From Rebecca billardiae RCC1528 (Eukaryota > Protista > Haptophyta): 64,000 bases of DNA. Numbering within the stretch: the first letter of the stretch is position 1; the number at the start of each line of letters is the position of its first letter. The notes under the pieces were generated by a model that was not told where the DNA came from, searched no databases, and saw only the letters and a list, made by a program, of their open reading frames with translations. This document shows, one piece after another, positions 9,837 through 52,539 of this stretch. Made by a program: the position numbers and the translations under genes. The stretch covers positions 3,782,001-3,846,000 of the forward strand of contig OZ251225.1 in the NCBI GenBank assembly GCA_965240325.2, written 5' to 3'.

Positions 9837-9950
9837 GTACTACGCGGCTGCATCGCGCAGGGCGGTTCCCGCATCCCGGGTCCTGCCCTGCAGCTTGAAG
9901 CTGGTACCATCGGCGACGGCTTCATGGGCGGTGACAGTTGGCGGGCGTCA

Positions 9951-9998
9951 ATCTCGCCTGCCTGAGCTGTGTGCGTCTCTTATTCTTAGTAAACTGTA
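9951..9998. repeat. 48-bp dispersed repeat, copy 1 (identical to 59516-59563)
   Basis: atctcgcctgcctgagctgtgtgcgtctcttattcttagtaaactgta present twice in the same orientation. Confidence 0.9.
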
Positions 9999-10196
9999 GG
10001 TACTGACATCCCGACCAAGGGCCCTTGAATCTTGATATACAATACGACGTACTGTACAGTATCGTACTGTACTGTACAGGCTCCGTTGAAGATGACAATG
10101 AGCACGACAAGTACAGTACGTACCGATGACTGAACACTGTACCGTCGAGCAATAGCATGAGGCCAGCGGAGCGGAAGCTACTGATGTTCGTTCCGC

Positions 10197-14023: not shown

Positions 14024-14074
<51 letters not shown>

Positions 14075-15532: not shown

Positions 15533-15578
<46 letters not shown>

Positions 15579-17507: not shown

Positions 17508-20098
17508 TTACACACGCGACTTGGCGCCCGCGGCGCCATCCGCTGCCGCGGCCGCGGCCGACGCAGACGCAGACGCGTTCGCATCGGCCGTGCCGCCGCC
17601 GCCCGCACCCCCGCTCGCCGCCGCGCCGGCCGGTGCCGCCGCCGCCCCGTCGGCGTCGTCGCCGAGGGGCTTGGTCGTGAGCAGCCCGTCGAGAGGCACC
17701 CGCTCTGTCCTCGCGCCCTCCCCCGGCGCGCCGCCCCCCTCCTTCTCCGCCTCCTCCAGCAGGAGCTGCTCGACGCGGTCGCCCATCAGCTCGAGCTGCT
17801 CCTTCATCGACTTGCGCACGTAGTCCGGGGGGATCGCCCACCAGTCCGGGTCGTCGGCGGTGATGAGCTCGCACGAGGGGAAGGCGAGCGTGAGGTGCAC
17901 CGACATGGCGACGGGGATGCGCATCTTGACGGGGAAGAGGCCGGCGGGCACCTTCTCCTCGAGGAAGGAGCGGGCCTGCGCAGAGCGGCGCGCGCGCGGG
18001 CAAAGTGTCGGGCGAAGGGGCGCGCGCGGCGCGGAGCGCGCCGGGGGCGGAGGCCAGGCGGCGGGTGGGCACGCGCGCGCCTGGGCGCGCGCCGCCCCGC
18101 ACGAGCCTCGGCGCGTGTGCGCGCACCCCGGCGGCCGTGCGCCCGCCCGCGCGCGCGGCGCACCTTTGCGATCTCCCTGTTGAGCGGCGCCACCATCTCC
18201 AGCAGCGCCACGAGCTCGTCGGTTGAGATCGGGAAGCCGGAGACCATGTTGGCACGGCCCTGGGGCGTGGCCGAGGGCCGAGGGCGCGCGGAGGCGGTGG
18301 GGCCCGCGGGGGGCGGGTGAGAGGCTCGGCGGCGGTGCGGTGCGGCGCGGTGCGCTGCGCCGGCAGCCGAGATCAGCCGGGGCGGGCGGCCCCGGCCGCG
18401 GTGCGCGCGCGCCCCCGCTGGGCGCTGGCCCTTGGGCGCTGGGCGCTGGGCGCTGGGCGCTGGGCGCTGGGCGCTGGCCCTCACCGTGGCCTTCTTCTTG
18501 ATCGTCTGCACCTCCTCCTCGTCAGCATGGCCGCCCTGCCGCTTGGAGCGGCCGAACACGCCGCCCTTCTTCGGCGCGGCCGGGCCTGGCGCGCCCTGCG
18601 CGAGGTACTCGGCGAAGCTGTCGGGCAGCGCCTTCACCACGCCCGTCTTGGCCTTGCGCTCGATCTGCAGGTCGGACGCGGCCGCAAACACGGTCGTCTC
18701 CCACGCGCCGATGCGCTCGCTCTTGTAGCCGTCGCGCAGCCGCAGCCGGACGGGCTCGAACGACGTGTTGGCCGTCTGCACGTTGACCTGCACGATCTCG
18801 GAGGAGGTGAGGAAGTCGATCTCCGCGTCGAGCGAGTCGCCGTCCTTGTGCGCGGAGAGCATGCCCGCGTCCTTGACAAAGAGCTTCCGCTCGTCGTGGT
18901 TGAGGATGCACAGCTCCTCGGACGTCCGCTCGCCGTTGAAGCGCATCGAGACGTTGCCCCGCTTCCACTTCATCCCCTCGAAGCCGACGATGGACGCGTC
19001 CACGCGCAGCTTGGTGCCCACCTTCCAGATGGTGTACTCGTCGTACGGCGCGAGCTGCTTCACGATCGCGGAGAACACGGGCGAGCCAAACTCCCACGAC
19101 ATGGTCATCTTGAAGTCAGGCATGCGGCGCATCGCCTCGAGCACCACGGGCTTCTTCTGCGCCCACAGACGCATGTTGGCCTCGTGCGACGCGGCGAGCA
19201 GCTCGCGCAGGATGCCGATGTGCCCCTGCACCACCGCGTCCTCGATCACGGTCCACCCCGCCGAGTTCTTCACGTTCACGTCGTAGCCCGCCTCGAGCAG
19301 CAGCCGCACGACCGGCAGGTTGTGCCGCAGCACCGCGATGTGCCCGGGCTGCGCGCGCGGCGCGGCGAAGGGCGCGCGCGCGCGCGCATGCGTGAGCGCG
19401 TGCGCGCGGGGGTCGGTCGCGCGCGTTTCGCGCGCTCGCGCGCTCGCGCCCGAGCCGCCCGGCCGCACGCCCCGCCCGGCGCGCGCGCGCGCGCGCGCGC
19501 GCACCGTGTTGCCCCTCGGGTCGAGCATGTGCATCTCAGAGGGGAACTGCGTGCAGTACCGCCGCAGGCTGTCGAGGTCGCCCACGTACGCGAGCTCGTG
19601 CGCGCGGTACGCCTGGCCGTCGTTCTCGGCGTCCTTGAAGACGTCGGCGGTGCCCGCGCCCTCGTCGCCCTCCTCGCCCGTGTCGCCCTCCGCGCCGGCC
19701 GACGCGTCCTCCGCGCCCGCGTCGGACCTCGCACCCACGCTGGGCGGCACGGCCTCGTCCGCGTCGAAGAGCGAGCTGGCGACGCTCACCGCGCTGAGGA
19801 GCGGCTGGAACTTGGTGAACAGCCGCGCCATTGCCTCGCCGTCGCCCTCCCCCGCCACCGCGCGCGCGTACAGCTGCTGCGTCTCCTCGTCGGCCGCGAG
19901 GAAGAGCGGCGCAAACTGCTGCAGCACCTGCTGGAAGCTGCGCGCGCCGTGGGTGGTGAGGATGCGCTGGACGGTGTCCTGGATCGACGCGTCGCGCACG
20001 CCCGAGAGGATCACCAGCGTCTGATACAGCTGGGCCGCGTCGAGCGGCTGCTGCTCATCCGCTGCGGGCGCATCGCCCGCCTGATCATCCGCCATCAT
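17508..20098 (-). CDS. ANKRD13: Ankyrin repeat domain 13-like protein (ankyrin + GPCR-chaperone domain); 3 introns
   Basis: Ankyrin DPRGNT|PGHIAV..LLLEAG..KNSAGWTVIEDAV; MPDFKMTMSWEF..APYDEYTIWKVGTKLRVDASIVGF..WKRGNVS; FPVKMRIPV; IPPDY. Introns 19349-19504, 18260-18484 (contains a tgggcgc 7-mer repeat), 17976-18163. Confidence 0.85.
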
Positions 20099-20337
20099 TC
20101 ACGTGCCAAGATCAGTACCGTGGTGATGCGCCGTTGGGCGTGGGCGTCACCAATTCCAATAATTCTAATTTATGGATTTACGTCGACGACGAAATAGTTT
20201 TTTCGGCGCGATTCTCCTTCTGATGATCGAATTAACTCCCGACGTGCCGGCTCTCCCGACGTGCCGGCTCTGATGAGGACGCGCGAGCGGGCGCGAGCCG
20301 CGGCGTGGCTCGGCCCGTCGCGCCGCCGCCCTGCCGC

Positions 20338-21780
20338 TCACCTCCCCGCGCGCTCGAGCAGCAGGTCCTCCTTCATGTTGACGAACTCGAGCATGAACCG
20401 ATTCGAGCCCGGCTCGAGCACGCTCGGCGGCTGCTCTCCGCTCTCGTCTACCTCGCCGTCCTCGCCGGGCATCGCGGCGCCCTGGCCGCACTGCGCGGCC
20501 ATCCACTCGAGCTCCTCCTCCTCCTCGCTCACCAGCCTCCACACCTCGAGCGTCGCGATGCGGAAGCTCGGCTCGGTCGAGAGCAGCGGCGCGCGGAACC
20601 CGGGGCACGGCAGCGCGCTGCCCGTCTGCAGGTCGGCGCTCAGCCGCAGCCCGAACGAGTCGAGCGTGCCGCCGAAGGCGATGTACTCGGCGCCGGTGCA
20701 GTAGAAGTTGTCGAGCGGGAGGCTGCCCAGCTCGCGCCGGCAGAACACGCGCGCGCCCTCGCTCGCGCTGCTCGGCGCGGCCGCCGCCGCCGCAGCGGGC
20801 GCCTCTGCCGGCGCGGCCGCGGCCGCGGCCGCGCGCTCGGCGGCCGCCGCGAGCGCGCCGGCCGCGCGCACCTGCCGGCTGGGCAGGCTGAAGAGGAAGG
20901 CGCCGCGGCCCTCGTCCGAGCGGTACTGCGGCTCGGTGCGCCGGCGCAGCGGCACGGGCACGAACACGCCGAACCTCGTCTGCTCGCCCGTGCCGCGCGC
21001 CGGCAGCTGCCTGACGAGAAGAAACGCCGGCGTGTGCGCGCGCAGGCACTGCATCAGCAGCGTGAGGCTGTGCCCGTCGCGCTTGGAGGAGAAGGCGAGG
21101 CGGAGCGGGCGCGCGAGCAGCGGCGCGAGCTGCGCCCGCCCCGCGCCCTCCACCGCCATCCGCAGCAGCTCGCGCAGCTCCGCGCGCACCGCCCGCCTGC
21201 GCAGCGCGTCCACGTGCCACTCGTGCGCGCGCCGGCGCGTGGCGAGCTCGCGCAGCGCGGCGGCGGGCATGCGCGTGGCGCACGAGGCGCACAGGCCGGG
21301 CGAGTGCTCGAAGTACGTCATCTCCGTCGCCTCGCTCACGTGGCACCGCGCGCACGTCGACAGGTGCACCTCGCGGTACTGCAGCCGACTGAAGCAGCCC
21401 GGGTGCAGCTTCGCCCACAGGCCGGCGCACGACTCGATCTCGTCGCGCAGCTGGCGGCAGGTGGCCGCGGCGGCGAGCACGCCCGCGACGCCGAGCTTGG
21501 GCAGCACGTGCATCAGCAGCAGGTCGACGGGCATCGCGAGCAGCACGCCGCCCTCCACGCCCCGGCCGAATCCGGCCGCGCGCGGCGGGGTGCGCTCGGC
21601 CGCATCCGCGTCGTGCGCCGGGGCGGCAGCGGTGGCAGCCGACGGCGCGTGGGGGGTCGGCCTCCGCCCTGGATCCACGGGCCACCCAAGCGCCGCCACG
21701 AGCTGCCTCGCCAGCCGCTCCACGTGCGCGCACGCGTCGGCGACGGCGGAGTTCTCGTCGCGCGTGACCGGCATCCCCAT
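20338..21780 (-). CDS. F-box + TLDc domain protein
   Basis: F-box LLAMPVDLLLMHVLPKL..LAAAATCRQLR; TLDc LAFSSKRDGHSL, FGVFV, AFLFSL, YIAFGG, FGLRLSADLQTGS..CPGF, FRIATLEVW. Confidence 0.8.
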   Translation of the reverse strand: MGMPVTRDENSAVADACAHVERLARQLVAALGWPVDPGRRPTPHAPSAATAAAPAHDADAAERTPPRAAGFGRGVEGGVLLAMPVDLLLMHVLPKLGVAGVLAAAATCRQLRDEIESCAGLWAKLHPGCFSRLQYREVHLSTCARCHVSEATEMTYFEHSPGLCASCATRMPAAALRELATRRRAHEWHVDALRRRAVRAELRELLRMAVEGAGRAQLAPLLARPLRLAFSSKRDGHSLTLLMQCLRAHTPAFLLVRQLPARGTGEQTRFGVFVPVPLRRRTEPQYRSDEGRGAFLFSLPSRQVRAAGALAAAAERAAAAAAAPAEAPAAAAAAAPSSASEGARVFCRRELGSLPLDNFYCTGAEYIAFGGTLDSFGLRLSADLQTGSALPCPGFRAPLLSTEPSFRIATLEVWRLVSEEEEELEWMAAQCGQGAAMPGEDGEVDESGEQPPSVLEPGSNRFMLEFVNMKEDLLLERAGR

Positions 21781-21861
21781 TCGAGATTTCGCGCGACTCG
21801 TTCAGTCGCGACGGATCGGAAGCTCTTCACCGGACGTGAGAATCAGCCGCACGACGGCACG

Positions 21862-22548
21862 ATGCGCACGCCCGTCTCCGCCGTGCTCACGCGCTTGCTG
21901 CTCGTGCGCCACGGGGAGGTGATTCCCCCGGCTGCCGACTGCCTCTATGGCGGGATGGACGTGCCGCTCTCCGACCTCGGCCGCCAACAAGCCGTCGCCG
22001 CCGGCCGCGAGGCGGCCGCGCACCCCATCGAGCGCGTGTACACATCCCCGCTCTCGCGCGCTGTCTACGGCGCAGAGCAGCTCATGGCCGCGCAGCGCTC
22101 GCCGCCGCAGCTCTTCACCGAGCCAAACCTGCGGGAGATCGACCGCGGCTCCTGGGGCGGCCGCCCGCGCGCCGAGATCGAGGCGGAGTGCCCGGGCGGG
22201 CTGGATCGGCTGAAGGTAGACGAGCACTTTGCACCGCCAGACGGCGAGAGCCCGCAAGCGCTGCGCGAGCGGGTGCGCGAGGTGTACAGGCGGGTGATCG
22301 ACGCCACCCCGCCCGGCGGGACGGCGGCCATCGTCTCGCACATGCACGTCACGCGCTGCGTCGTGGCGGACGTGCTCGGCCTGCCGTTCAGCCGGTTTGG
22401 CGAGCTGGACATCCCGCTGGCCTCCAGCTCGATGGTCGAGGTCGACAAGGCGAGCGGAGAGATGTCCATGGCGTGGATCGGCCGCCCGCCGGACATGAGC
22501 GAGGCGGATGCGAACACGGACCTCGCTGGCAACACCTGGGGTGGCTAG
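21862..22548 (+). CDS. Histidine phosphatase superfamily protein (PGM/CobC-like)
   Basis: LLLVRHGE, PLSDLGRQQA, VYTSPLSRA, LREIDRGSW, PDGES, IVSH. Confidence 0.9.
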   Translation: MRTPVSAVLTRLLLVRHGEVIPPAADCLYGGMDVPLSDLGRQQAVAAGREAAAHPIERVYTSPLSRAVYGAEQLMAAQRSPPQLFTEPNLREIDRGSWGGRPRAEIEAECPGGLDRLKVDEHFAPPDGESPQALRERVREVYRRVIDATPPGGTAAIVSHMHVTRCVVADVLGLPFSRFGELDIPLASSSMVEVDKASGEMSMAWIGRPPDMSEADANTDLAGNTWGG

Positions 22549-22919
22549 ACTATACCGACAGGCGACGACAGCGCGCCTTTGTGACAGCTACGACTGATGA
22601 TGTCTTATTAGATGACGTCTGACGATGCTGCGTCATCTGTCATTACGACACGTACAGTAGGCTCTGTCAGTAGCTAGTACGTACACTGTCACTTGGACAC
22701 CGTGACGTCCGCCGACACACTCGTAACGCAGGCTTAGGCGCACCGTGCTGGCAGGCGAGATTACATATAATAATATCAGCAGTTATTTGTCATACTCTTA
22801 ATAATAATTCATCGCGCGCGCTGCTAGCAGCACTGCTCAGCAGCACAGCTCAGGCGCAGGCGAAATTGTAGCGTGACGAGTAGTACTGATGTCGTAGTAG
22901 TAGCAGCAGGCAAATTTCT

Positions 22920-23753
22920 TTATTCAAACCACTGCTTTATATTCTGCTTCGCATTGAACTTGGAATGCTTGGCCGCCGTCTCCTCGAGCACAGCGCGCAG
23001 CTACGCGTTGAAGGCGTCGGCGCCGCCAAAGCCTGCCTCGAGGATCGCAAGCAGCAGGTCCTTGTCGCGCTCCGACGTGCAGTCCGCGAGGCGCAGGTCA
23101 ATCTCCGACGGCTCAAACTCGGCCTCTGGCTGCGTGACCAGGAGCATGCTCTCCGCCTTGCCGCCCATCTCCCAGAAGGTGAACACCTCGATCAGGCACC
23201 ACAGCCGGCGGTAGTAGCTTGGCCCGACCAGGCACACCAGGTCGTGGCACGCGGCGAGCCACACGGGCAAGCACTGGAGGGACACGGCGATGTCGGTCTG
23301 GTCGATGCAAAACTTGCTGCTCGGCGCACGCGCGGCGTCGACAGAGAGTGGAGAGGGGGGGGGGGGGGGCAGTGCGCCAGCGTGCCCGCAGCGGTGAGCG
23401 TGCCGCCGCTGAGCGGATCAGCGCGCGCGGCGCAGGCGCTACCAACGAGCAGCCGGAAGGCGGCGCCCACCCATCGCACGCGCGGAGCGGTGCGGCGGTG
23501 GGGTTGGTGCGCGGCGCGCACTCGATCCAGACGGTCGGCTCGCGCTGGTGCGAGGCGACAAACGCCGAGCGCCAGCGCTGCAGCTGCTCCCACTTGGCGT
23601 CGGCGTCGTCTTGCCCTGGCAGACGGCGCGGCACGCGCGCGCGTGTGCACCGGGGGCGTGCCGGTGAGCTGTGGAGGCACTGCACGGGCGAGCCGGCCCG
23701 CGCGTGGTGGAGCTGAGCTGAGACGCGCGCGGCTGCTTACACGGCGCGCGCAC

Positions 23754-39785: not shown

Positions 39786-42700
39786 TCAGTATCTCGGCGC
39801 GGGCGTGATCTCCGCTGGCGTGGACGTGGACGGGCTCGGCTCGCCCGAGTGCGGCCACGGCGCGGCAGCTGCGCCGGCATCCGACCCGACCGGCGAGGCC
39901 GGGCCGGGCACCGCGCCGCTTGCCAGCTGGTACTCTGCGCGCACAGGCGCGTCGACGGGCGCGAGCGTCTCCGCGCGGCCGGATGGCGGCGCGCTGTCAT
40001 CCGCCGCGCTCGCGCCGTCCGCCACGCCGTCAGCGTCGAGCGCTGGCGCGGGCGCTGGGCGCGGGGCGCGGGCCCGAGGCCGGCGCTCGTCTGCGTCACC
40101 ACTGCGCACGTCGCCCACGCTGGGCGAGTCGCCCGCGCCCGCGGCTGCGCACGCCGCGCCCACGCCGACGGCTTGCGCGTCCGCGCGCTCGGCGGCGGGC
40201 ACAGCGTCCGCTGCGGGCAGCTCGGCGGGTGCGCCGGAGGCGGGGGGCGCCTTGCGCGGCGAGCGGCGCTTGGGCGAGCGGCGCGCGGTGCCGTCGGCGC
40301 GCGCGCCCTTCTTCGGCCGGCGCCGCGCGTGGCCGTTGGACTGCGCGCGCCCGCCCGCGCCCTCGGCGCGCGGCTGGCGCGCGCCCTCTGCGCCCGGCGT
40401 CCGCGGGTTTGGCGCGACGCGCATGGGCGTCGTCTGCGCGACCGAGGGCGCGCCGCGGTTGCCCCAGCGGCCGCCCTCGGCGGAGGAGCGCAGCGGCGGC
40501 GCGTTCGCCGAGCGGTGGCCGCGCACCCTGCCCCGCGCCTCCGCGCCGCGCGCCCGCTGCTGCTCCTCCAGCCCGGGGGGCGGCAGCGCGTTGGCGATCG
40601 AGCCCTGCTGCCACTCGAACGCGTTGGCGCGCCCCCACGACACGTACACGATGGCGCCCACCAGCACCATCCACAGCACGAGCGTGATGAAGCGCAGCGA
40701 GACGAGGCCGAGGACGCGCGAGTCGAGCATCTCGTCGCGGTGCCCGTAGATCCCGAGCACCACCGTCACGATCCCCGCGAGGTTGACCAGCGACAGCTCG
40801 ACGTACGTGAGCGCAAAGATGGCGCGGAACACTACCAGCACCTTGCACGCAAACGGCTCGGCCATCGGCTGGTACCGGAACGTGAACGAGATGAGGATGA
40901 AGGCGGTGGCGAGCCACAGCACGATCGAGATGATGCGCAGGTGGTTGATCGGCTTGTCGTCGTCCACCGAGATCACCAGGTCCGCCATCCAGTTCACCAG
41001 GATCGACAGCCGGCCGGTGAGCCCAAACTTCCAGCCGTGCGTCGGGTGGCGCGTCCAGTGGCCAGCGCGCTTCACGACCGTCGAGCCCCAGTACGTCATC
41101 AGCTGGCGCAGCTTCTTGGAGGAGGTGGGCAGCGCGTCCTCCACCTCGGAGAGGTAGGTGACGTCGTTGTACGACGCGGACATCCGGCTGGCGACGACGA
41201 TGTACATCGGGAACACCACCGCGCTCGTGAAGAGGAAGATGCGGTGCTGCCCCTCGAAGCACACGATCTGCGGGTTCATCTCCCACCGGCCGCCCGCGCA
41301 CGAGATCACGCGCAGCAGGTAGCGCGAGATCATGAAGAAGCCCGCGCCGCCGAGGATGATGATGAAGTAGACAAGGAAGCGCTCGACGTAGTACAGCGCC
41401 TGCCCGCCCTTCGTCTTGTACTCCACCTTCGTCGCGCCCTTGTTCCGGAAGTCGGTGACGAACGAGGTGGGCACGGTGCGCAGCGCGTACACGCACCGCT
41501 CGTGCGCGCGGCTCACAAATAGCGCGATGGAGAGGACGGCGAAGAAGACCATCACCCAGTACACGACGTTGTACAGCAGGAACGAGTCGACGCTGCCGCC
41601 GATCAGGTTGTCGATCCCGAACATGAACGCGTCCGCCGCCACGCGCAGCTCGCGCAGCCCGGACGCGTCCCACGTCTGGTGCGACAGCGCGTAGAAGACG
41701 GCGGAGAAGGTCACCATCGGGCCGTCGAGCGTCGCGGTGAGCACGCTCGAGATCGGGATGTGCGTGAACTTGACGGCGGAGGAGCGCGGCATCGTCTTGG
41801 CGAGCACCTCGCTCTGCGGCGCCGGGCGCGGCGACGAGCCGCTCCCCTCTGCCGGCAGCCGCTGCAGCGCGCCGGCCGACCTCGCGCCGCGCGCGGACGC
41901 GCCGAGGAAAGAGCCGCTCTGGTGCGGCCGCGCGCCGCTGCCGTGCGCGCTCAGCTCGAGCGCGGGCAGCCCGAGCGGCTCGGGCTCGACGCCGCGCTCG
42001 ATCACGAGCGAGGTCTCCCACATCATCACCTGCGCGCGCGCGCGCGGCGCGGGGGGCGGGCGCGCGGCCGAGTTGGCGGGCGGTGAGCCACGCGCGTCGC
42101 GGCGATGAGCGTCGCGCGCGCGGCCACAGCGCGGCCGGCGCGTGCGCTCGATCGAGCGGCCGGAAGCGCACCAGCGTGTCATAGTGGCCGGAGAAGATGC
42201 GCGCGCGGTACTCGTACCCCTCCGCGCTGCGGTTGACGAGCAAGTCGTCCTGCGGCGGCCGGGCGCGGCGCGGCGCGGCGCGCGTGAGCGTGCGCGCAAC
42301 GCGCGGCACAGCCGCGCCCGCCCACGAGCGCGCGCGCGCGCGCTCGGTCGGTCGAGCGCGGTGCGGCGCGCGCGCGGTGCGCCGTGCGGCTGCGCCGCAC
42401 CTTTGAGAGCGTGATGAAGGTGACGGCGGTGCGGCACTCGATCTTGACGAGCACGCACGCGCGCGCGATCGACCACTGCATGATGAAGCCGTCGTTGCTC
42501 CCGGAGAAGACGAAGGTGGGCCGCTCGCCGCGCGGCAGCGTGACACACGACAGCTTGTTGGTGTGCCCCAGGTACACCTGCTCCTGCGCGCCCGAGTGCG
42601 CGTTCCACCGCCGCAGCGTGCGGTCGTTGCCCGCCGAGAAGAGCTCGGCGCCGGACTCGGAGAGCGCGATCGCGCGGATCCACTCGTTGCGCAGCTCGTC

Positions 42701-43334
42701 CTGCACCTTGAGCTCGGGCAGCCGCTCCGGCCGGATCACCAGGTCCGGCTGGATCACGGCCGCGTCGCGCGAGACGGAGGTTGAGGTCGGGAAGACACGC
42801 CACTTGCAGACGGTGCCGTCGTTGGAGCACGAGAAGAACCAGCGGCCGTCCGACGAGGCGACCATCGAGCGCACCCACTTGGAGTGGCCGCGGTAGCGCG
42901 CGACGATGATGGAGAACTTGAGGTTCCACTGGAAGATCTCGTTCCCGTCCACGTCGGGCTCGGTCTGCTCGAGCCCGCCCGCGGAGAGCAGCCCCTGGTC
43001 GCGGTCGACGAGCAGCAGCGCGGACACCTGCGCGGGGTGCTGGTGGTGCTCGTCGCGCAGCAGCAGCATCGGCGCGTCCTTGTCGTCGCCCACGTTCCAC
43101 ACCTGCACCGCGCCCGTGTCCAGCCCGTAGTAGAACGTCTTCGTGTCCGCGAGCGGGTGCGACGGCGACTTGGCCATGCTCGCGATCGGCGTGCGCCCGA
43201 CGGGCTTGGGCTTGCTCGGCTTGGCCGGGCGGCGCCACAGCGACGAGCCCAGTCCCGCGGCGGCGGGCGCGGTCGCGGCCGAGCCGGCGCGCTGCTGCGC
43301 CGCGCCGCCGCCCGCCGCGCCGCCGCCGCCCGCC

Positions 43335-43369
<35 letters not shown>

Positions 43370-45286
43370 CGCCGCCGCGCCGCCGCCGCTCGGCGCGGCG
43401 CAGCAGCGCGCCTTGGGCTCGGGCGAGCCGGCCGGCACGGGCGCGGCGCCGCCGCTCGGCACGCGCATCGGCTCCGACTCGACGACGCGGAGGCAGCCGC
43501 CGGTCCAGACGTACCACAGGCGGACGGTGCCGTCGAAGGAGCCCGAGGCGATGCACTCGCGCCGGTCGAGGATGCACGGCACGCCGCACATCACCCACCC
43601 GTCGTGCCCCTGCCGGATGAGCTTGTCGACCGACACGCCCGCGGACGCGGCCTGTCGCGACTGCTGCAGCCGCGCGCGCGCCGACCACTTCCCGAGCGCG
43701 ATCACAAACTGGTACGTGTGGTTGAGGTGCTCGATCACCTTGGTGGCGGGCGCGAGGTGGCGCGGCTGCAGGAAGAAGTGGTGCAGCGCGCCGTTCAGCT
43801 CGAGCCGCGCGCTCTCGAACGGGAACAGGTCCTGCACGCCGTCCTTGGCGTCGTGCAGCGCCAGCAGCAGCGTGAGCACGTCGTACGACTTGACGGTGCC
43901 GTCGAGCCGGCGGCCGATGGGGAAGTTCTCGCCGAGCGCGTCGCCGTGCAGCTGCTCGAACTCGGCGGGCGACGAGCCGCAGAACGTGAGGAAGAACCAG
44001 CGCTTGTCCCGGTTCGGCACCTCCCCGCGGCAGATCCGCTCCCACAGCCCGACCAGCCCGAGCTCGGACGCGTTCTTCAGGTAGCGCATCACCGGGTCTT
44101 GCGGGTGCTTGGCGGCGAGCCCGCGCACGAGGCGCATGGGCACGTTGGGCACGGCGACGCGCGAGACGACGCGCAGCGGCACGCGGTGCCGCACGCACCA
44201 CGAGTACACCTGCGCCGCGGCGGGCTCGTCGAACATGTTGTTCGCCGCCTGGTCGGGCCGCAGCCACGTCGGGTGCTCGTGCACCACCACGCCGCCGTCG
44301 CTCTCGAGCTCGACGCCGCCCATCACGCAGACGCTCTCGATCTTGGCGACGGCGAGGGCGGAGCGCGCGCCGACGAGCTGCGCCAGGTCCGACAGCGCCG
44401 AGATCACCACGAACGTCAGCGACTTGTTCAGCACGAGCTCGAGCGTCTCCGCCAGCAGCCGCTGGCCGTCGTGCAGCCGGCCCTCGTCCACCTTCGGGTA
44501 CCCCGGGAACGCGTACTCGTGCGCGAGCGGCTTGTGCTGCTTCGAGGTCTGGTGGCCGATGCCGACGGGCACGTCGTCCAGGTTGAAGTAGTCCAGGATC
44601 GCGCGCGCGAGCGCCGCGCGGTTCCTCGCCTCCTTGAGCCCCGAGGTCGGGTGGACGCCGCCGCCGTTGCACACGACCGCCGCGAGCACGATCCGCTCCT
44701 GCAGGTGGAGGCTGGCGGCCATGAGCAGCGCGATCACGTCGTCCGGGTCGGGGCCCGGGTCGGTGACGAGCACGATCGTCCGCGCGCGCAGGTGCTGGAA
44801 CGCCGGCGTCGCCGCCGCGATCCGCGCCTGGCCGCGCGTCATGCCGATGCTGATCTCACGGCGCAGCCGCTTGAAGCACATGCGCGAGCCCTTCACGGGG
44901 CGCTTGGAGAGCTCGCGCCGGTTGTGCTGCACGTTCTGCAGGTCGGCCTGCTGCGACGCCGTCGGCCCGCGCCCCGCCGCGCGCGACCGATCCGACGGGT
45001 CGGCCGCCGCGCCGCCGCGCCCGCCGCGCGGCGCGTTCTGCCAGCCGCCGAGCGGCGCGTGCTGGTGCGGCCGCCGGCCGCGCGAGGAGGACGAGGACGC
45101 GGCGGCGGCGTTGGGGGCGACGCCGGTGAAGCCTCGGCCCGGCCCACGACCGCTGCCCCGCCCGCCGCCCGCCCAGCCACCCCTTCCCCCTTGGCTGTTC
45201 ATCCCGGGGGCGGGCACCGACTCCACGCCCGCCTTGCTGGTGGGCTTGGCCTGCAGCTGCGCCGCCGCGAGGATGCGCTTGCTCAT
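39786..45286 (-). CDS. Large fusion protein: nucleoside-hydrolase-like domain + WD40 repeats + multi-pass TM region + low-complexity tail; 2 introns
   Basis: IVLVTDPGPDPDDVIALL, VISALSDLA, VCVMGG, AANNMFDEPAA, YDVLTLL; WD40 GHDGWV..ASGSFDGTVRLW, GHSKWVRS..SCSNDGTVCKW, SAGNDRTLRRW, GHTNKL..SGSNDGFIMQW; introns 42250-42400 and 42030-42171 join this to a TM-rich exon. Confidence 0.8.
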
Positions 45287-47130: not shown

Positions 47131-50100
47131 TCAGGACGATGCGGAGGACGCGGCCGAGGACCCAGCGACCGTCGTCGGCGTCGCGCCGCCGGCGTGATGC
47201 GCGCGCGCGGCGGCGGCGGCGGCGGTGCGATGCTTGAGCGGCGGCGCGCGCTGGTCGGCGTCGCTGGGGGCGAGGGGCCGCGCCTCGTGCGGCCCGGTGT
47301 AGCGCTGCGCGGGCGAGCCCGCCCACGTCTCGCCTGGCCCGACGGTCTCGCCCTTGAGCACGGTCGCGAGCTCGAGCAGCGTGCCCTCCGCCTCGACGCG
47401 CGCGCCGGGCAGCGCGCCCGCCTGCGTGCGCACGCTCGCGCGATCGCCCACGTGCACCTTGCGTATGCGCAGCACGAGGTGCTCGACCGTGTGCGCGCCC
47501 AAGTCTGAGAAGGTGACGGCGGCGCGCTCGCCCACCTCGAGCATGTCCCAGTCCGCGCTCCACAGCTCGAAGAGGCACGCGTCCCGCCCCACGCGCGCGC
47601 CGAGCGCGCGGTACAGCACGTTGCAGTACGCGCTGCCGGAGAACATGTGCAGCGCCTCCACCATGTTGCGGTTGAGCAGCAGCATCAGCACCCAGCGCGC
47701 GTGGAAGGCGCTGTAGAACGGGAAGTCGCCCTCCGCCATCCGGCCGATGATCGCCCACTTGAGGCCGATGTGCAGCGCGATGTGCGCGCACAGCGTACCG
47801 GCGAGCGCGAGCGGCGTGCTCGCGATCACGACGGGCAGCGGCGCGCCCGCGCCCGCGAGCGCCAGCTCGAGGCCGACCGCGCCCGCGCCGACCGCCTCGG
47901 TGAGCGGCGCGACAAGCAGCACCGCGCTCAGCCCCCACGCCTGGAAGGCGTGCCAGCGCCATGAGGTGTGCCCGGCCCACGCAGCGCGCGCCGCCTTGGT
48001 CGCGGGGTCGCTGGGCGGGAGCGCCTCGAGCGGGCGCGACTTGGTGAGGTACACCGACTTGCCGCCCGCGTTGCCGATCCGCGTCTCGCGCGGCGCGATG
48101 GCCCCGTCGACGATGGTGGTGGTGCCGACCACGGCGCCCTCGCCCACGTCCGCGCCGCCGAGCAGCGCGCAGTTGTCTAGCACGGCGGCGCGGCGGCGCA
48201 CGGTGACGCGGCGCAGCGTGCCCGCCGCGTCCATCGGCTCGACGTGCACGTACGCGCCGAACGTGACGCTGTCCTCCACGGTGAGCAGGTCGTGCTGGTA
48301 CAGCTGCAGGTTGTCGATCTGCACGCGCCGGCCGATGGTGGCGCCCAGCAGCCGCAGCTTGCACGACAGCAGCTCGAGCGAGCCCCACGGCTCGAGCGCG
48401 TCCTGCGTGAAGCGCGAGAAGACGAGCAGCTCCATCAGCCAGTGGCGGAAGAGCTCCCACTCGCTCTGCGCCGCGGGCCCCTCGCGGAACCGCCCGACCA
48501 CGCCCCACTTCACCGCCACCACCAGCGCAAACAGCGCCTCGGAGTAGACGAACGTGAGTACCCACGTGACGGCGCCACCAAAGAGCAGCAGCCGCGCGGC
48601 CGGGGGGAGCGCGGGCGCGGCGCCGTCGAGCGCGGCCCACACGGCCTCGAGCGCGTACACGCACGGCACGAACGCCACGCCGAGGACGAGCAGCTGCAGC
48701 GGCAGCCCGAGCGCGACGCGCAGCAGCGCCTGCGGCGCGCACTGCGAGCGGAGTCGGCGCGGCGCGCCCGCCGGCCGCGGCCGCAGCACGTTGGCGCCGC
48801 CGCCCGAGGTGGACACCGCGCCCATCTCGGTGTCGGGCGGCACGCTGGTGCCGGCGGGCACGCTCGCGCCCACGCCGATCACGCTGCGCGCGCCCACCTC
48901 CACGCCGCGCAGCACGAGCAGCCCGTCCTGCACGTAGAAGCCCCCCAGCGAGACCGCGCGCCCCACGACCGCGTCCGCGCCCACGCGCAGCATGTCAGGC
49001 TCGCGCACAGACACCGCGGCGTGCAGCTCGACGCGCGGGCCGATGGTGGCGCCGAGTGCGCGGTACCACGCGGGGAGGAGCGGCGTGCCCATCAGCAGCG
49101 GCTTGAGCGACTCCGTCGCCGCCTCCTCGAACCGCCGCGCCGCCCACCAGCGCAGGTAGTACGCCCCCCACAGCGGGTACTGCCCCGGCCGCACTGCGCC
49201 CACCAGCGCCCACTTGAGCAGCAGCGCGAGCAGGGCGCCCAGGAGCACGGTCGCGAGGATGGCGGCGGGCAGCGCGGCGAAGGCGGCCGCGCGGCCGTAC
49301 CGCGCGTACACCTCGTACGCGCCGTAGTACGCCGGGTAGTACGCCACGTCCTCGAAGCACACCGACGCGAGCACCGTCGCACCCTGCACGAGCAGCGCGG
49401 CGGGCGCGCTGCTGGAGTGGCCGTGGTAGGGGCGCGGGGGAGGGCGCGGCGGCGCGCCGTGGTGCGCGGCGCGGGCTGCGGCGGCCTCGGGGTCGGCGGA
49501 CCCGCCGCCGCGCGCGCCCGCGCCCGCGCCCGCGCTCCCCCCGAGCCCCTCCTCGGGCAGCGTGCGCGCGTGCGCCGCGAGCGCCTCGATGGTCTCGTGG
49601 TTGTACACCGCCACGGTCTGCAGCTGCGCGTGCACGCGCGCGCGGAGGAGGGTGGCGACGCGGCCGGCGAGGAGCGAGTTGCCGCCGAGCGCGACGAACT
49701 CGGCGCGCACCGAGATCTCCTCCGCCGTCTCCAGCGCCTCCTGCCACACGCCGTGGATCGCGAGCTCGAGCTCGTCGCGCGGCGGCACGTGCGGCGGCGC
49801 GGCGTGCGCGGCCGCGGCCGCGCCGCCCGCGAGCGCGCCGAGCGAGAGCGTGCGCGCGCGCGGCGGCGCGGCGAGCGCGGCGCCGGGCGGCGGCGGCGGC
49901 GGCAGCGCCTTCCGATCGAGCTTGCCGTTGTGCGTGAGCGGCATCGCGCGCAGCACCACCACCGCCGACGGCACCATGTACGCGGGCAGCGCGCGCGCCG
50001 CGGCCTGCCGCACGTCGTCCGCGCGCACCGCGCGGCCGCCGCCGCCGGCCGTCACGTAAGCCACCAGGCGGTGCGAGGCGGTGGAGGCGCCGACGAGGAG

Positions 50101-52539
50101 GACGGCGACCTGCGAGACGCCCGGCGCGCGCGCGCACGCCGCCTCCACCTCGCCCAGCTCGATCCGGAAGCCGCGCAGCTTCACCTGCGAGTCGCGCCGC
50201 CCGGCGAACTCGAGCTGACCGCTTGGCAGCCAGCGCGCGAGGTCGCCCGTGCGGTACAGCCGGCCGCGGCCAAACGGGTTGGGGAGGAAGGCGGCGGCGC
50301 TGAGCTCGGGGCGGCCGACGTACCCGCGCGCGACGCCCTCGCCGCAGAAGCAGATCTCGCCGAGCTCGCCCAGCGCCACGTGGCTCGGCGCGCCGCCCGG
50401 CGCCGCCCCCCAGCGCAGCAGCCGCACGGTGGTGCACTCGATCGGCCGGCCGATCAGCACGCGCAGCGGCGGAGCAGCCGCGTCGAGCGCGCGCGCGCCG
50501 AGGTCGGGGCACGCCCAGTGGGTCATGTCCGCCTCGGTCGGGCCGTACAGGTTGTGCAGCCGCGGCGCGCTCGGGAAGACGCCCGCCGCGCAGTACCGCG
50601 CCACCAGCTCGCCCGGCACGCCCTCGCCCGCCAGCAGCACCGCGCGCACGGCGCGCAGCCCGCGCTCGCGCGCCGCGCCGCGCTCGCTCGCCGCGTCGAG
50701 CAGCGCCGAGAGGTGCGACGGGACGAAGAAGGCGACGGTGATGCCCGCGGCGCGCATCAGCGCGAGCAGCTCGTCCGCGCGCCTGTGCACCTCCGGCGGC
50801 GCCACCTGCAGCACCGCGCCGTGCGTGGGCGCCCAGAACAGCTCCCACTCGCTCACGCCAAACACGTACGGCGTCTTGTGCAGCACGCGGTCGGAGGCGC
50901 GCAGGGCGAAGGCGCGCTGCAGCCAGCGCGTGCGGCCGACGAGGCCGCGGTGCTCGACCTGCGTGCCCTTGGGGCGGCCGGTCGTGCCCGACGTGAAGAA
51001 GACGTACACCAGGTCGGACGCGCGCGCCGGCCCGCGCTCGCCCGCGCGCAGCGGCGGCGCGGCGCGCGCGGCGGCGGCCGCGGCCGCGGCCGCGGCCTCC
51101 GCCTCGGCCGCGGCGCGCGCCGCCGCGCCGCGGCCGCCCGGCCACGCGGGCGCACGCCGCGGCTTCGCGCCGCGCTGCGGCACCTCGCCCTCCGCGCCGC
51201 CGCCGCCGCCGCCCTCCGCGCGCGCGCCTCCGCCGGGCGGCAGCAGCTCCTCCAGCGTGAGCACCACGCCGCCCCAGCCGGGCGGCACCAGCTGCGCCGT
51301 GCTGGCCTGCGCGAGCAGCGTGCGCGCGCGCGTGTCGTCGAGGATCATGCGCATGCGCTCGGCGGGGTACTCCGCGTCGATGGGCACGTACGCGCCGCCC
51401 GCGCGCAGCACGCCGTAGATCGCCGCGACCGTCTCCGCCGAGCGGCGCAGCAGCAGCGCGACGAGCCCGCCGCGGCCGACGCCCGCCGCGGCCAGCGCGC
51501 CGCCCACGCGCGCGCTCGCGGCGTCCAGCTGAGCGTACGTGTACGCGCGCGTCTCCGAGCGCACGGCGAGCGCCGCCGGCGTGCGCGCCGCCTGGCGCAG
51601 CATCATCCCGTGGATGGTCGCCCCCGCCTCCGACTCGGCCTCCGCCTCCGCCCCCGCCTCCGCCCCCGCCGCCTCGGAGGCTGCAGGGCGCTCGGCGGCG
51701 GCCGGCTCGGCAGCGCCCGCGCCGCGCCCTCCGCCGCCGGCGCCGAGCAGGCCGGTCGCGCCGAGCAGGCCGCGCACACCCGGCAGCCACGAGCGCGCCT
51801 CCCCGCTCGGCCACGCGCGCGCCACCAGCTCGAGCTCCGCCTCGGACGACAGCCGCACCTCGCGCGCGCGCGCGCGCGCGTCGCTCGCGCACGCGAGCAG
51901 CAGCGCGCGCGCGTGCGCGAGCACGATGGCGGCCGAGCGCTCGTCGTGGTGCTCGCGGCTGAAGACGAGCGTGATGCGCGCACCCGACGGAAATGCCTCG
52001 CGGTACTCGCTCAGCGCGAGCGCGAGCTCGAGGCACGAGTGCGGCCGCTCGGCGGAGGGCGCGGGGCCGAGCCGGTGCGCGCACTCCGCGTCGAGCGCGC
52101 GACCCGAGAGCGTCGCCGCGCCGCGCTGCGCAGCGCGCGCGCCGAGGCAGGCGAGCTGGACCGCGTGCACGCCCACGCTCGCGCCGCTCGGGTGGCCCGC
52201 GCTCGACGCGGCGAGGAGGCCGCCGAGGGTCGTGTCGTCGTCGACGGCCAGCGCCACACGCTGCACCGTCGTGACGTCGGGCGCGCTCGCACGGCCGACA
52301 AAGACCTCGTCCTCGCCCGCGTACCGCGCGCCAAGCGCGCCGAGCGATGCGACGAGTGCGTCGAGCGGGGGAGCGTTCTGGGCAGCGCACGCGCCGAGGA
52401 GCGCCGCGTGCTGCACCGCGTCGAGGTCGACGCCCACCGCGCCGAACGCGCGCGCCGTGGGCTTGCGCGAGCGGACGTGGGCCGCGACGTGCGGCAGGTC
52501 GATGAGCGCGGTCTCCTCGTCGGCAGCGCCACTCGTCAT
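47131..52539 (-). CDS. Pls/PosA-type membrane-bound NRPS-like synthetase (partial C - A - PCP - three TM/hexapeptide-repeat domains), intronless
   Basis: A cores TYAQL, LRAGGAYVPID, YVFFTSGTTGRPKG, NLYGPTE, GEICFCGEGVARGY, YRTGDL, GRRDSQVKLRGFRIELGEVE, LPAYMVP, NGKLDR; PCP FVALGGNSLL; three repeats KW..G..(P/E)G..W / LGA.(I/V)G followed by hexapeptide runs; terminal WAGSPA. Confidence 0.92.
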   Translation of the reverse strand: MTSGAADEETALIDLPHVAAHVRSRKPTARAFGAVGVDLDAVQHAALLGACAAQNAPPLDALVASLGALGARYAGEDEVFVGRASAPDVTTVQRVALAVDDDTTLGGLLAASSAGHPSGASVGVHAVQLACLGARAAQRGAATLSGRALDAECAHRLGPAPSAERPHSCLELALALSEYREAFPSGARITLVFSREHHDERSAAIVLAHARALLLACASDARARAREVRLSSEAELELVARAWPSGEARSWLPGVRGLLGATGLLGAGGGGRGAGAAEPAAAERPAASEAAGAEAGAEAEAESEAGATIHGMMLRQAARTPAALAVRSETRAYTYAQLDAASARVGGALAAAGVGRGGLVALLLRRSAETVAAIYGVLRAGGAYVPIDAEYPAERMRMILDDTRARTLLAQASTAQLVPPGWGGVVLTLEELLPPGGGARAEGGGGGGAEGEVPQRGAKPRRAPAWPGGRGAAARAAAEAEAAAAAAAAAARAAPPLRAGERGPARASDLVYVFFTSGTTGRPKGTQVEHRGLVGRTRWLQRAFALRASDRVLHKTPYVFGVSEWELFWAPTHGAVLQVAPPEVHRRADELLALMRAAGITVAFFVPSHLSALLDAASERGAARERGLRAVRAVLLAGEGVPGELVARYCAAGVFPSAPRLHNLYGPTEADMTHWACPDLGARALDAAAPPLRVLIGRPIECTTVRLLRWGAAPGGAPSHVALGELGEICFCGEGVARGYVGRPELSAAAFLPNPFGRGRLYRTGDLARWLPSGQLEFAGRRDSQVKLRGFRIELGEVEAACARAPGVSQVAVLLVGASTASHRLVAYVTAGGGGRAVRADDVRQAAARALPAYMVPSAVVVLRAMPLTHNGKLDRKALPPPPPPGAALAAPPRARTLSLGALAGGAAAAAHAAPPHVPPRDELELAIHGVWQEALETAEEISVRAEFVALGGNSLLAGRVATLLRARVHAQLQTVAVYNHETIEALAAHARTLPEEGLGGSAGAGAGARGGGSADPEAAAARAAHHGAPPRPPPRPYHGHSSSAPAALLVQGATVLASVCFEDVAYYPAYYGAYEVYARYGRAAAFAALPAAILATVLLGALLALLLKWALVGAVRPGQYPLWGAYYLRWWAARRFEEAATESLKPLLMGTPLLPAWYRALGATIGPRVELHAAVSVREPDMLRVGADAVVGRAVSLGGFYVQDGLLVLRGVEVGARSVIGVGASVPAGTSVPPDTEMGAVSTSGGGANVLRPRPAGAPRRLRSQCAPQALLRVALGLPLQLLVLGVAFVPCVYALEAVWAALDGAAPALPPAARLLLFGGAVTWVLTFVYSEALFALVVAVKWGVVGRFREGPAAQSEWELFRHWLMELLVFSRFTQDALEPWGSLELLSCKLRLLGATIGRRVQIDNLQLYQHDLLTVEDSVTFGAYVHVEPMDAAGTLRRVTVRRRAAVLDNCALLGGADVGEGAVVGTTTIVDGAIAPRETRIGNAGGKSVYLTKSRPLEALPPSDPATKAARAAWAGHTSWRWHAFQAWGLSAVLLVAPLTEAVGAGAVGLELALAGAGAPLPVVIASTPLALAGTLCAHIALHIGLKWAIIGRMAEGDFPFYSAFHARWVLMLLLNRNMVEALHMFSGSAYCNVLYRALGARVGRDACLFELWSADWDMLEVGERAAVTFSDLGAHTVEHLVLRIRKVHVGDRASVRTQAGALPGARVEAEGTLLELATVLKGETVGPGETWAGSPAQRYTGPHEARPLAPSDADQRAPPLKHRTAAAAAARAHHAGGATPTTVAGSSAASSASS

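What the first reader, a model, noticed from the sequence alone, without database searches (positions are those of the whole stretch)
47131..52539. Intronless Pls-type (poly-amino-acid/polyester synthetase-like) membrane NRPS in an algal genome
Seen: one uninterrupted 1802-aa ORF with complete A-domain cores, a PCP with GGNS (Ser codon 49675-49677) and three TM + hexapeptide-repeat units ending in WAGSPA; no TE or reductase domain. Established: this A-T-(TM/C-like)x3 layout defines epsilon-poly-L-lysine synthetase and relatives, which iteratively polymerise one monomer at the membrane and are characterised mainly in bacteria and some fungi. Inference: this alga makes an uncharacterised homopolymer (defence, surface or storage). 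The gene may be horizontally acquired, being bacterial-like and lacking introns over 5.4 kb while many neighbours have them. No PPTase or precursor gene is visible in the window, so these would act in trans.
Basis: partly seen in the sequence, partly recalled or inferred. Interest (0 to 1): 0.92.

Follow-up and report, generated by a model that had tools for sequence, protein, structure and literature searches.

The report
Algal Pls-type membrane synthetase, new clade
A haptophyte alga carries an intact gene for a membrane-bound, one-module enzyme built like the bacterial poly-lysine and poly-ornithine synthetases. It belongs to an undescribed protist branch whose substrate pocket is not made for an ordinary amino acid, so its product is unknown and probably new.

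Summary
Window 47131-52539 (minus strand) is one uninterrupted 1802-codon gene. It encodes an adenylation (A) domain with all core motifs and a carrier domain (Ser955, codon 49675-49677). A C-terminal domain of about 720 aa follows, made of three homologous units (helical hairpin plus left-handed beta-helix). There is no TE or reductase domain. The C-terminal model (pLDDT 92) superposes on characterised PosA at TM 0.81.

The architecture is Pls/PosA-type, but the gene is not a recent bacterial import.
- The host is a Pavlovales haptophyte with about 73% GC, and nearly every neighbour is also a single ORF.
- The gene shares the host's GC3 (0.96).
- In the C-terminal-domain tree it sits in a protist-only clade (pelagophytes, dinoflagellates, Cymbomonas, Diplonema), split from bacteria at 100% support.

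Three things are new here.
- This clade scores 171-239 bits on TIGR02353, below the 423-bit cutoff.
- Its A domain derives from serine-type canonical NRPS modules, not from bacterial Pls A domains, and a remnant half condensation domain sits in front of it.
- It has lost Asp235 and Glu239, which bacterial members use for diamino acids.

A cationic poly(amino acid) is therefore unlikely. The monomer is probably a small acid without an alpha-amino group. Expression and product could not be tested. Sequence and word look-ups of earlier scan notes returned nothing on other DNA.

The parts
47131..52539 (-). Complete single-exon coding sequence, 1802 aa plus stop
   Evidence: ORF list and translation. 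In-frame GC3 is 0.84-1.00 throughout and drops outside the ORF.
51805..52539 (-). Residues 1-245: decayed remnant of the C-terminal half of an NRPS condensation domain. It starts after the position of the HHxxxDG motif, which is absent.
   Evidence: A custom HMM of canonical C-domain ends scores 25.2 bits, against a maximum of 6.5 in 500 shuffles. Alignment A2. Pfam Condensation positions 196-454 of 456 match the Diplonema homologue P0122, and 193-438 match P0127.
51628..51804 (-). Residues 246-304: Gly/Ala/Glu-rich low-complexity linker
   Evidence: Translation. GC3 is 0.90 in frame. No counterpart in relatives.
49921..51627 (-). Residues 305-873: adenylation domain. The A4 motif reads F-G-V-S-E-W-E (Gly561 at the Asp235 position, codon 50857-50859). 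A3 starts at 516, A5 at 663, A7 at 762, A8 at 780, and the A10 lysine is residue 873.
   Evidence: Pfam and TIGR01733. Motif positions. Pocket columns.
51025..51258 (-). Residues 428-505: lineage-specific Ala/Gly/Arg-rich insertion between motifs A2 and A3
   Evidence: Absent from Cymbomonas and all other relatives. In-frame GC3 is 0.98, so it is coding and not a read-through intron.
49570..49758 (-). Residues 928-990: carrier (PCP/T) domain. The phosphopantetheine attachment site is Ser955 (49675-49677).
   Evidence: Pfam PP-binding E 3e-08. Codon position.
48745..49410 (-). Residues 1044-1265: unit 1, a helical hairpin (TM1 and TM2) plus left-handed beta-helix (C1), with the K-W-x3-G motif at 1109
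   Evidence: Hydropathy, AF2 model, repeat homology, conserved residues.
47980..48744 (-). Residues 1266-1520: unit 2 (TM3, TM4, C2), with the K-W motif at 1344
47305..47979 (-). Residues 1521-1745: unit 3 (TM5, TM6, C3), with the K-W motif at 1594, family-conserved His1683 (47491-47493) and Glu1686, and the WAGSPA end motif at 1739
47134..47304 (-). Residues 1746-1802: Ala/Ser/Pro-rich tail with no detectable domain
   Evidence: Translation, no Pfam hit, pLDDT below 55 at the end of the model.

Best explanation
This is an intact nuclear gene of a Pavlovales haptophyte. It encodes a membrane-embedded, single-module NRPS-like enzyme with the Pls/PosA architecture.

It belongs to a protist-only clade that I found described nowhere in the searched literature. 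In this clade a fragment of a serine-type NRPS module (half C domain, A, T) is joined to the Pls-type terminal domain.

Shown here: the architecture, the fold, the clade membership, and a pocket lacking Asp235 and Glu239.

Inferred working:
1. The A domain adenylates a small carboxylic acid that has no alpha-amino group. Candidates are a hydroxy acid, a keto acid or an omega-amino acid.
2. The acid is loaded on the phosphopantetheine arm at Ser955.
3. The C-terminal domain takes the acyl group from the carrier thioester and passes it to a hydroxyl or amino nucleophile at the membrane. This domain is a pseudo-trimer of three beta-helices sitting on six bent helices, with conserved His1683 and Glu1686.

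By analogy with Pls and PosA, the acceptor is most probably a free monomer or a growing, non-covalently held chain. That would give an oligomer or polymer released at or through the membrane. Of the confidence given, the architecture and clade part is near certain. The iterative polymerisation part is about even odds.
For: Architecture and integrity:
- Pfam and NCBIfam domain matches.
- Coding GC3 signature over all 1802 codons.
- 44 of 49 family-conserved C-terminal residues are kept, and the other 5 are conservative changes.
- Three homologous units.
- AF2 model with pLDDT 92 and pTM 0.92, showing three repeats of two long helices plus a beta-helix.
- The model superposes on the AlphaFold model of characterised PosA, residues 626-1332, at TM 0.81 and E 4e-34.
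- Foldseek against PDB finds beta-helix acyltransferases (GlmU, serine acetyltransferase, maltose and galactoside acetyltransferases, QdtC), including the acyl-ACP-dependent LpxD.

Clade:
- The exhaustive search gives eukaryotes as best hits: Cymbomonas at 37% identity and E 3e-125, then Diplonema, Zooxanthella, Chrysophaeum, Gymnodinium, Aureococcus, Aureoumbra and Prorocentrum.
- In the ML tree, 19 named eukaryotes and 14 named bacteria lie on opposite sides of a branch with 100% SH-aLRT. The query sits in a 25-row protist clade, also at 100%.

Pocket:
- All clade members have F-[G/A]-[VIL]-S-E-W-E in the A4 motif.
- 169 of 176 other family members have Asp235, mostly with a D-x-E-x-x-G-T-V-x-K code.
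- Gly or an aliphatic residue at position 235 is reported for keto-acid and anthranilate activation (PMC5238615; PMC10949194).

Origin of the A domain:
- Its per-domain score is 265 bits (median) against canonical NRPS A domains and 166 bits against bacterial Pls A domains.
- The A-domain tree groups the clade with canonical NRPS at 99%.
- 83 of the 120 nearest A domains carry DVWH.SL[IV]DK, the L-Ser code (PMC10634486).
- A half C-domain remnant lies in front of the A domain.

The Pls mechanism used for the analogy is taken from PMC9205021 and PMC10522769.
Against: - No expression data. No RNA run was listed, and the three runs that could be laid held only two short exact contigs.
- No product or substrate data exist for any member of this clade.
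- TIGR02353 scores below its curated cutoff, so family membership by NCBI's rule is not met.
- The pocket has no feature that demonstrates a second nucleophile on the monomer, which a polymerase would need.
- The sister eukaryotic clade couples the same terminal domain to acyl-CoA-synthetase-like adenylation domains. That fits plain acyl transfer as well as it fits polymerisation.
- Position 278 and the loop at 328-331 of the code are uncertain, because the clade has a two-residue deletion there.
Confidence: 0.6

Rival explanations
1. Single-turnover acyltransferase. The A-T part loads an acid, and the beta-helix/TM domain transfers it once to a different acceptor at the membrane, such as a lipid head group, a glycan or a secreted metabolite. 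This is how LpxA and LpxD use acyl-ACP. No polymer is made.
For: The C-terminal fold matches sugar and lipid acyltransferases, including the acyl-ACP-dependent LpxD. The pocket is hydrophobic, lacks Asp235 and has no evident site for a second nucleophile. The sister eukaryotic clade uses acyl-CoA-synthetase-like adenylation domains. One clade member, P0127, carries an added carboxylesterase domain.
Against: Every characterised enzyme with this terminal domain is an iterative polymerase (Pls, PosA and the poly-DAP synthetase; PMC9205021, PMC10522769, PMC4668381). The whole-domain fold matches PosA at TM 0.81. An acidic residue (Glu238 position, and Asp/Glu after GPTE in most members) is conserved and could hold a distal amine.
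Confidence: 0.3
2. Classical cationic homopoly(amino acid) synthetase, making a polymer like epsilon-poly-lysine, delta-poly-ornithine or poly-DAP. This is the simplest reading of the Pls label.
For: Same domain order and terminal-domain fold as Pls and PosA.
Against: The pocket has Gly at position 235 and Trp at 239, where 169 of 176 other family members have Asp235, mostly with the D-x-E-x-x-G-T-V-x-K code. The A domain is not of the Pls lineage. The eukaryotic homologues listed in PMC10522769 have DAESIG(S/T)VVK codes, unlike this clade.
Confidence: 0.05
3. Recent horizontal acquisition from a bacterium.
For: The gene has no introns. The word-index search listed mostly bacterial Pls/PosA proteins. 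A-domain identity to actinobacterial NRPS is 45-50%.
Against: GC3 of 0.96 equals that of the neighbours. The neighbours are single-exon too, as are 45% of D. lutheri genes. The best exhaustive hits are all eukaryotic. The eukaryote/bacteria split has 100% support. No hit exceeds 37% identity, so no close donor exists in 1.84 billion representatives.
Confidence: 0.03
4. A decaying or silent gene without function.
For: Long terminal branch of 1.07. Large low-complexity insertions. Decayed N-terminal half C domain. No detectable orthologue at more than 37% identity, not even from the related Diacronema. No expression data.
Against: 5.4 kb without a stop. Strict coding GC3 throughout. All A-domain core motifs and the carrier serine are present. 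44 of 49 conserved terminal-domain residues are kept. The fold prediction is confident.
Confidence: 0.05

Closest known systems
PosA, delta-poly-L-ornithine synthetase of Acinetobacter baumannii (PMC10522769), and Pls, epsilon-poly-L-lysine synthetase of Streptomyces albulus
   Same: Single A-T module followed by a terminal domain of about 720 aa. That domain has six membrane helices in three pairs and three beta-helix subdomains. No TE domain is present. The whole terminal-domain model superposes on PosA at TM 0.81. The K-W-x3-G motifs and a His/Glu pair in the third unit are conserved.
   Different: Only about 20-30% identity. TIGR02353 scores 234 bits against more than 820 for bacterial members. 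The A domain has a different lineage (serine-type canonical NRPS) and lacks Asp235 and Glu239. There is an extra N-terminal half C-domain remnant. The host is a eukaryote, and the gene sits in a separate eukaryotic clade.
Uncharacterised protist homologues: Cymbomonas tetramitiformis KAK3270755, Chrysophaeum taylorii KAJ8600341/KAJ8600340, Aureococcus KAH8090038, and Diplonema, dinoflagellate and MMETSP transcripts
   Same: Same clade (100% support). Same F-G-x-S-E-W-E pocket motif and the same two-residue deletion after GPTE. 38-39% identity over about 1300 residues to Cymbomonas. Several are also single uninterrupted ORFs.
   Different: The query has a long branch, large Ala/Gly-rich insertions, and a more decayed half C domain than Diplonema. 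None of these proteins has a known product.
Fungal and streptophyte A-T-Pls-type proteins (Hortaea, Halteromyces, Gongronella, Polychytrium, Mesostigma)
   Same: Sister eukaryotic clade of the terminal domain. Same A-T-terminal domain order.
   Different: Their adenylation domain is like an acyl-CoA synthetase and aligns only weakly with the query's A domain (21% identity).
Left-handed beta-helix acyltransferases (LpxD, LpxA, GlmU, serine, maltose and galactoside acetyltransferases)
   Same: Each of the three soluble subdomains has this fold. LpxD also takes its acyl group from a phosphopantetheine thioester on a carrier protein.
   Different: Those enzymes are soluble homotrimers. Here, three non-identical copies lie in one chain, anchored by helical hairpins and fused to their own loading module.

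Membership tests
Pls/PosA-family homopoly(amino acid) synthetases | Single A-T module with no functional condensation domain and no TE or reductase domain | tested here: met
   Pfam finds only AMP-binding, AMP-binding_C and PP-binding. The N-terminal half C remnant lacks the HHxxxDG region.
Pls/PosA-family homopoly(amino acid) synthetases | Terminal domain of about 730 aa with six membrane helices in three pairs and three tandem soluble (C1-C3) beta-helix subdomains | tested here: met
   Hydropathy, repeat homology, AF2 model at pLDDT 92, TM 0.81 to PosA residues 626-1332.
Pls/PosA-family homopoly(amino acid) synthetases | TIGR02353 score at or above the curated cutoff (423.1 bits) | tested here: not met
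   233.9 bits for the whole protein and 237.7 bits for the domain alone, at E 3e-69 to 3e-70. Six other eukaryotic members tested score 171-239 bits, and two bacterial members 825-839 bits.
Pls/PosA-family homopoly(amino acid) synthetases | A-domain code for a diamino acid: Asp235 plus Glu239 (D-x-E-x-x-G-T-V-x-K) | tested here: not met
   The query code reads G-V-W-F-L-A-L-(M-T)-K. The column mapping was validated because it reproduces DGESISVVNK, published in PMC10522769.
Pls/PosA-family homopoly(amino acid) synthetases | Makes a homopolymer by iterative transfer to a free acceptor chain | not testable with these tools
   Needs enzyme assay and mass spectrometry.
Serine-activating canonical NRPS A domains (code DVWHLSLIDK) | Asp235, His278, Ser301 and Asp331 in the pocket | tested here: not met
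   The nearest A domains have this code (83 of 120). The query has Gly235, Phe278, Ala301 and a shortened 328-331 loop. It is therefore a descendant of this group, not a member.
Left-handed beta-helix (hexapeptide) acyltransferase superfamily | Beta-helix fold of the soluble subdomains | tested here: met
   Foldseek hits to GlmU, serine acetyltransferase, maltose and galactoside acetyltransferases, LpxD and WcaF, with TM by hit up to 0.64. Weak NCBIfam hits to gamma carbonic anhydrase and NeuD-family acetyltransferase models for the query, and to WcaF and HpsU models for relatives.

The most novel reading that the evidence does not exclude
Marine protists (haptophytes, pelagophytes, dinoflagellates, prasinophytes, diplonemids) share a dedicated membrane polymerase. 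It strings together a small acid without an alpha-amino group into a biopolymer not yet known from nature. Examples would be a polyester from a hydroxy acid, or a nylon-like poly(omega-amino acid). The polymer would be made and exported in one step by this enzyme.
Probability: 0.25. Interest if true: 0.85.

Novelty: new variant of a known kind. Interest (0 to 1): 0.6.

Why it matters
Pls-type enzymes are the only known machines that build and release a homopolymer from a single NRPS module. All characterised ones make cationic poly(diamino acid)s.

This gene exposes a protist-wide branch that keeps the polymerisation domain but has replaced the loading module with one whose pocket excludes ordinary amino acids. 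The branch includes bloom-forming pelagophytes and dinoflagellates.

That gives a concrete, cloneable entry point to a possibly new class of algal surface or defence polymer, or a new membrane acylation. It is also a clear natural case of module-fragment swapping (half C domain, A, T) onto a non-NRPS catalytic domain.

Finally, the work corrects two easy misreadings: that the gene was recently transferred from bacteria, and that its product is poly-lysine-like.

Tried and rejected
- RNA evidence. No RNA run was listed. Three runs of one sample held only two short exact contigs and gave no joints. Expression is therefore untested.
- N terminus. Direct phmmer of residues 1-305 against the first 275 collected proteins found nothing. 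Pfam at E 10 also found nothing. Only a purpose-built profile of canonical C-domain ends detected the remnant.
- Remembered keto-acid codes. Those I recalled were in no paper and were dropped. Published codes were taken from PMC5238615 instead.
- Position 330/331. My first reading (M-T) is offset by a two-residue deletion in this clade. After correcting for it, the neighbouring NRPS domains read I/V-D, and for the query the position is ambiguous.
- Solved structures. A sequence search of the PDB matched the adenylation/carrier region only. Foldseek against PDB found only generic beta-helix enzymes for the terminal domain.
- Synteny with Chrysophaeum and Aureococcus loci: none with this window.
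- Earlier scan notes by sequence and by words: blank. Per the operators, a blank by sequence means nothing.
- Biosynthetic cluster. Eighteen neighbouring ORFs gave only unrelated functions or no Pfam match.
Full report
**1. Observation**

The minus strand of 47131-52539 is one open frame of 1802 codons starting with ATG. In DNA of 74-80% GC, long open frames occur in several frames, so I tested coding by codon position. In-frame GC3 is 0.84-1.00 in all 36 blocks of 50 codons. It falls to 0.36-0.72 directly upstream and 0.62-0.66 downstream. The whole ORF is therefore coding in this frame. That includes the N-terminal 300 residues and an Ala/Gly-rich insertion at 428-505, and no intron is read through.

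Pfam finds AMP-binding (315-740), AMP-binding_C (797-873) and PP-binding (928-990), and nothing else.

**2. The C-terminal domain**

NCBIfam TIGR02353 (Pls/PosA terminal domain) matches at E 3.4e-69 in three stretches. The score is 233.9 bits, below the curated cutoff of 423.1.

- Six hydrophobic segments lie in three pairs.
- The three units are homologous to each other (E 6e-12 to 1e-16).
- An AlphaFold2 model built on a 68-sequence alignment has pLDDT 92 and pTM 0.92. It shows three repeats of two long helices followed by beta-strand coils.
- Foldseek against PDB returns left-handed beta-helix acyltransferases: GlmU, serine acetyltransferase, maltose and galactoside acetyltransferases, QdtC, and LpxD in complex with acyl carrier protein. 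It returns no solved Pls-type domain.
- Against AlphaFold Swiss-Prot models, the top hit is the characterised delta-poly-L-ornithine synthetase PosA, residues 626-1332. TM is 0.81 over query residues 11-711, at E 4e-34.
- This agrees with the model described for PosA in PMC10522769.
- Of 49 invariant or near-invariant columns in the family alignment, the query keeps 44, and the other 5 are conservative changes. Kept residues include K-W-x3-G after the second helix of each unit, and His1683 and Glu1686 in unit 3.

The terminal domain is therefore a real and apparently functional Pls-type domain.

**3. Host and gene structure**

The window is eukaryotic. Its genes include a Yju2 splicing factor, a mitochondrial carrier, DnaJ-TPR, lycopene cyclase, ANKRD13, EDRF1 and an ion channel. 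The Yju2 neighbour is closest to Diacronema lutheri (77%) and Pavlovales sp. CCMP2436 (74%). The host is therefore a Pavlovales haptophyte.

D. lutheri has 73.25% GC and 45% single-exon genes (PMC8379373). In this window nearly every gene is one long ORF with GC3 of 0.88-0.97, and this gene has 0.96. Lack of introns and composition therefore give no sign of foreign origin. No PPTase or pathway gene is in the window.

**4. Relatives and phylogeny**

The word-index search listed mostly bacterial Pls/PosA proteins at 24-31% identity. The exhaustive search of 1.84 billion representatives told a different story. The best hits are longer proteins that the sources name as eukaryotic:

- Cymbomonas tetramitiformis (37%, E 3e-125)
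- Diplonema ambulator
- Zooxanthella
- Chrysophaeum taylorii (two tandem genes)
- Gymnodinium
- an Effrenium-containing cluster
- Aureococcus
- an Aureoumbra-containing cluster
- Prorocentrum/Polarella
- MMETSP transcripts

An ML tree of 94 terminal domains puts all 19 named eukaryotes and all 14 named bacteria on opposite sides of a branch with 100% SH-aLRT. The query lies in a 25-row clade (100%) in which every named row is a protist. Its sister group (95%) contains Chrysophaeum and an MMETSP transcript.

The neighbouring 29-row clade holds fungi (Hortaea, Halteromyces, Gongronella, Polychytrium), Mesostigma and a diplonemid. Unnamed members that I checked lie on eukaryotic contigs and are single ORFs too. 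Several hits are transcriptome assemblies, so relatives are transcribed.

Pelagophyte sequences occur at three places in the clade. The family therefore has old paralogy or has moved between eukaryotes, and the tree is unrooted. The closest sequenced relative of the host gave no hit above 37% identity in a library that does hold D. lutheri proteins. Loss or eukaryote-to-eukaryote transfer therefore remains open. A recent bacterial origin is not supported.

**5. The loading module is of a different kind**

I read the ten pocket positions from the core motifs and an alignment of 196 A domains. The mapping reproduces a code printed in PMC10522769 (DGESISVVNK), which validates the columns.

- 169 of 176 other family members have Asp235, mostly with a D-x-E-x-x-G-T-V-x-K code.
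- Every member of the protist clade has F-[G/A]-[VIL]-S-E-W-E. That means no Asp235, and Trp instead of Glu239.
- The clade also has a two-residue deletion after GPTE.
- The query's A core scores a median 265 bits per domain against canonical multimodular NRPS, and 166 bits against bacterial Pls/PosA A domains.
- In an A-domain tree, the protist clade (97%) groups with canonical NRPS (99%), while bacterial Pls A domains form their own side (100%).
- 83 of the 120 nearest A domains carry DVWH.SL[IV]DK, the L-serine code (PMC10634486).

Residues 1-245 are a decayed remnant of the C-terminal half of a condensation domain. A profile of canonical C-domain ends scores 25.2 bits, against at most 6.5 for 500 shuffles. 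The alignment starts just after the HHxxxDG motif. In two clade members (Diplonema P0122 and P0127), Pfam Condensation matches positions 193-454 of 456 above threshold.

The simplest reading is that a fragment of a serine-type C-A-T module was joined to a Pls-type terminal domain in an ancestor of this clade. The pocket then changed.

**6. What it does**

The following steps are inference.

Asp235 binds the alpha-amino group. Its replacement by Gly or an aliphatic residue is reported for keto-acid and anthranilate activation (PMC5238615; PMC10949194). The clade keeps Glu at position 238, and most members keep Asp or Glu after GPTE. Either residue could hold a more distal amine or hydroxyl.

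I therefore expect a small carboxylic acid without an alpha-amino group. It would be loaded on Ser955 and transferred by the beta-helix/helical-bundle domain. In Pls, the acceptor is free lysine or the growing, non-covalently held chain (PMC9205021). By analogy, an oligomer or polymer is the leading possibility here.

A single transfer to another acceptor is a serious rival. The fold also fits LpxD-type enzymes. The sister clade uses acyl-CoA-synthetase-like loaders. One relative has a fused carboxylesterase.

A cationic poly(diamino acid) is unlikely. The eukaryotic homologues tabulated in PMC10522769 (Planoprotostelium, Nematostella, Vitrella) carry bacterial-type DAESIG(S/T)VVK codes. They are therefore not this clade. 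Searches for algal Pls-like enzymes found no paper.

**7. Verdict**

- The Pls-type reading is right for architecture and fold.
- Two defining features of the Pls/PosA family are not met: the curated score and the diamino-acid pocket.
- The HGT idea is not supported.
- The product is unknown, and expression could not be tested.

I class it as a new variant of a known kind: a protist-specific subfamily with a swapped loading module that does not fit alpha-amino acids.

Noticed in passing
L005:8001-14531 (protein P0127, ENA contig of 662 kb): A clade member on a eukaryotic contig has the same half C domain, A, T and Pls-type layout, plus a C-terminal carboxylesterase (COesterase, E 3e-80). It is one uninterrupted ORF. 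The fusion hints at ester chemistry or product trimming.
   Followed up: partly
L001:10001-13990 and 19130-23134 (Chrysophaeum taylorii): Two tandem paralogues of the gene (1329 and 1334 aa). The looked-up copy (10001-13990) translates directly from the contig, so it is intronless. A related unnamed contig (L006) shares the SMN_G2-BD neighbour, so the locus is syntenic among pelagophytes.
   Followed up: partly
L003 and L004 (Logan contigs of 5.0 kb, runs ERR14847151 and ERR14847148): Independent contigs carry an identical Yju2 protein and the same gene order: lycopene cyclase, Yju2, then a called gene where the synthetase begins. Both contigs end about 229 codons into that gene, close to the start of the Gly/Ala-rich linker at residue 246.
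   Followed up: no
window:35329-37128 (+): An ORF combines a bacterial-type periplasmic binding protein domain (Peripla_BP_2) with DUF5522 in a eukaryotic genome.
   Followed up: no
window:32252-34780 (-): Hybrid histidine kinase (HisKA, HATPase_c, receiver domain) as one 842-aa ORF.
   Followed up: no
window:12001-16000: GC reaches 85% inside the 2337-aa ion-channel ORF (9922-16935, minus strand), and GC3 no longer separates the frames there. Amino-acid composition is driven to extreme Ala/Gly/Arg.
   Followed up: no
window:48244-52707 (+) and other antisense ORFs: Long ORFs antisense to the gene (up to 1487 aa) show mirrored GC3. They are by-products of the near-absence of stop codons, not genes.
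   Followed up: yes
window:39786-45286 (-): Two overlapping long frames (39786-44672 and 42179-45286) suggest an intron or frame change in the WD40 gene upstream. It is one of the few genes in the window that is not a single ORF.
   Followed up: no
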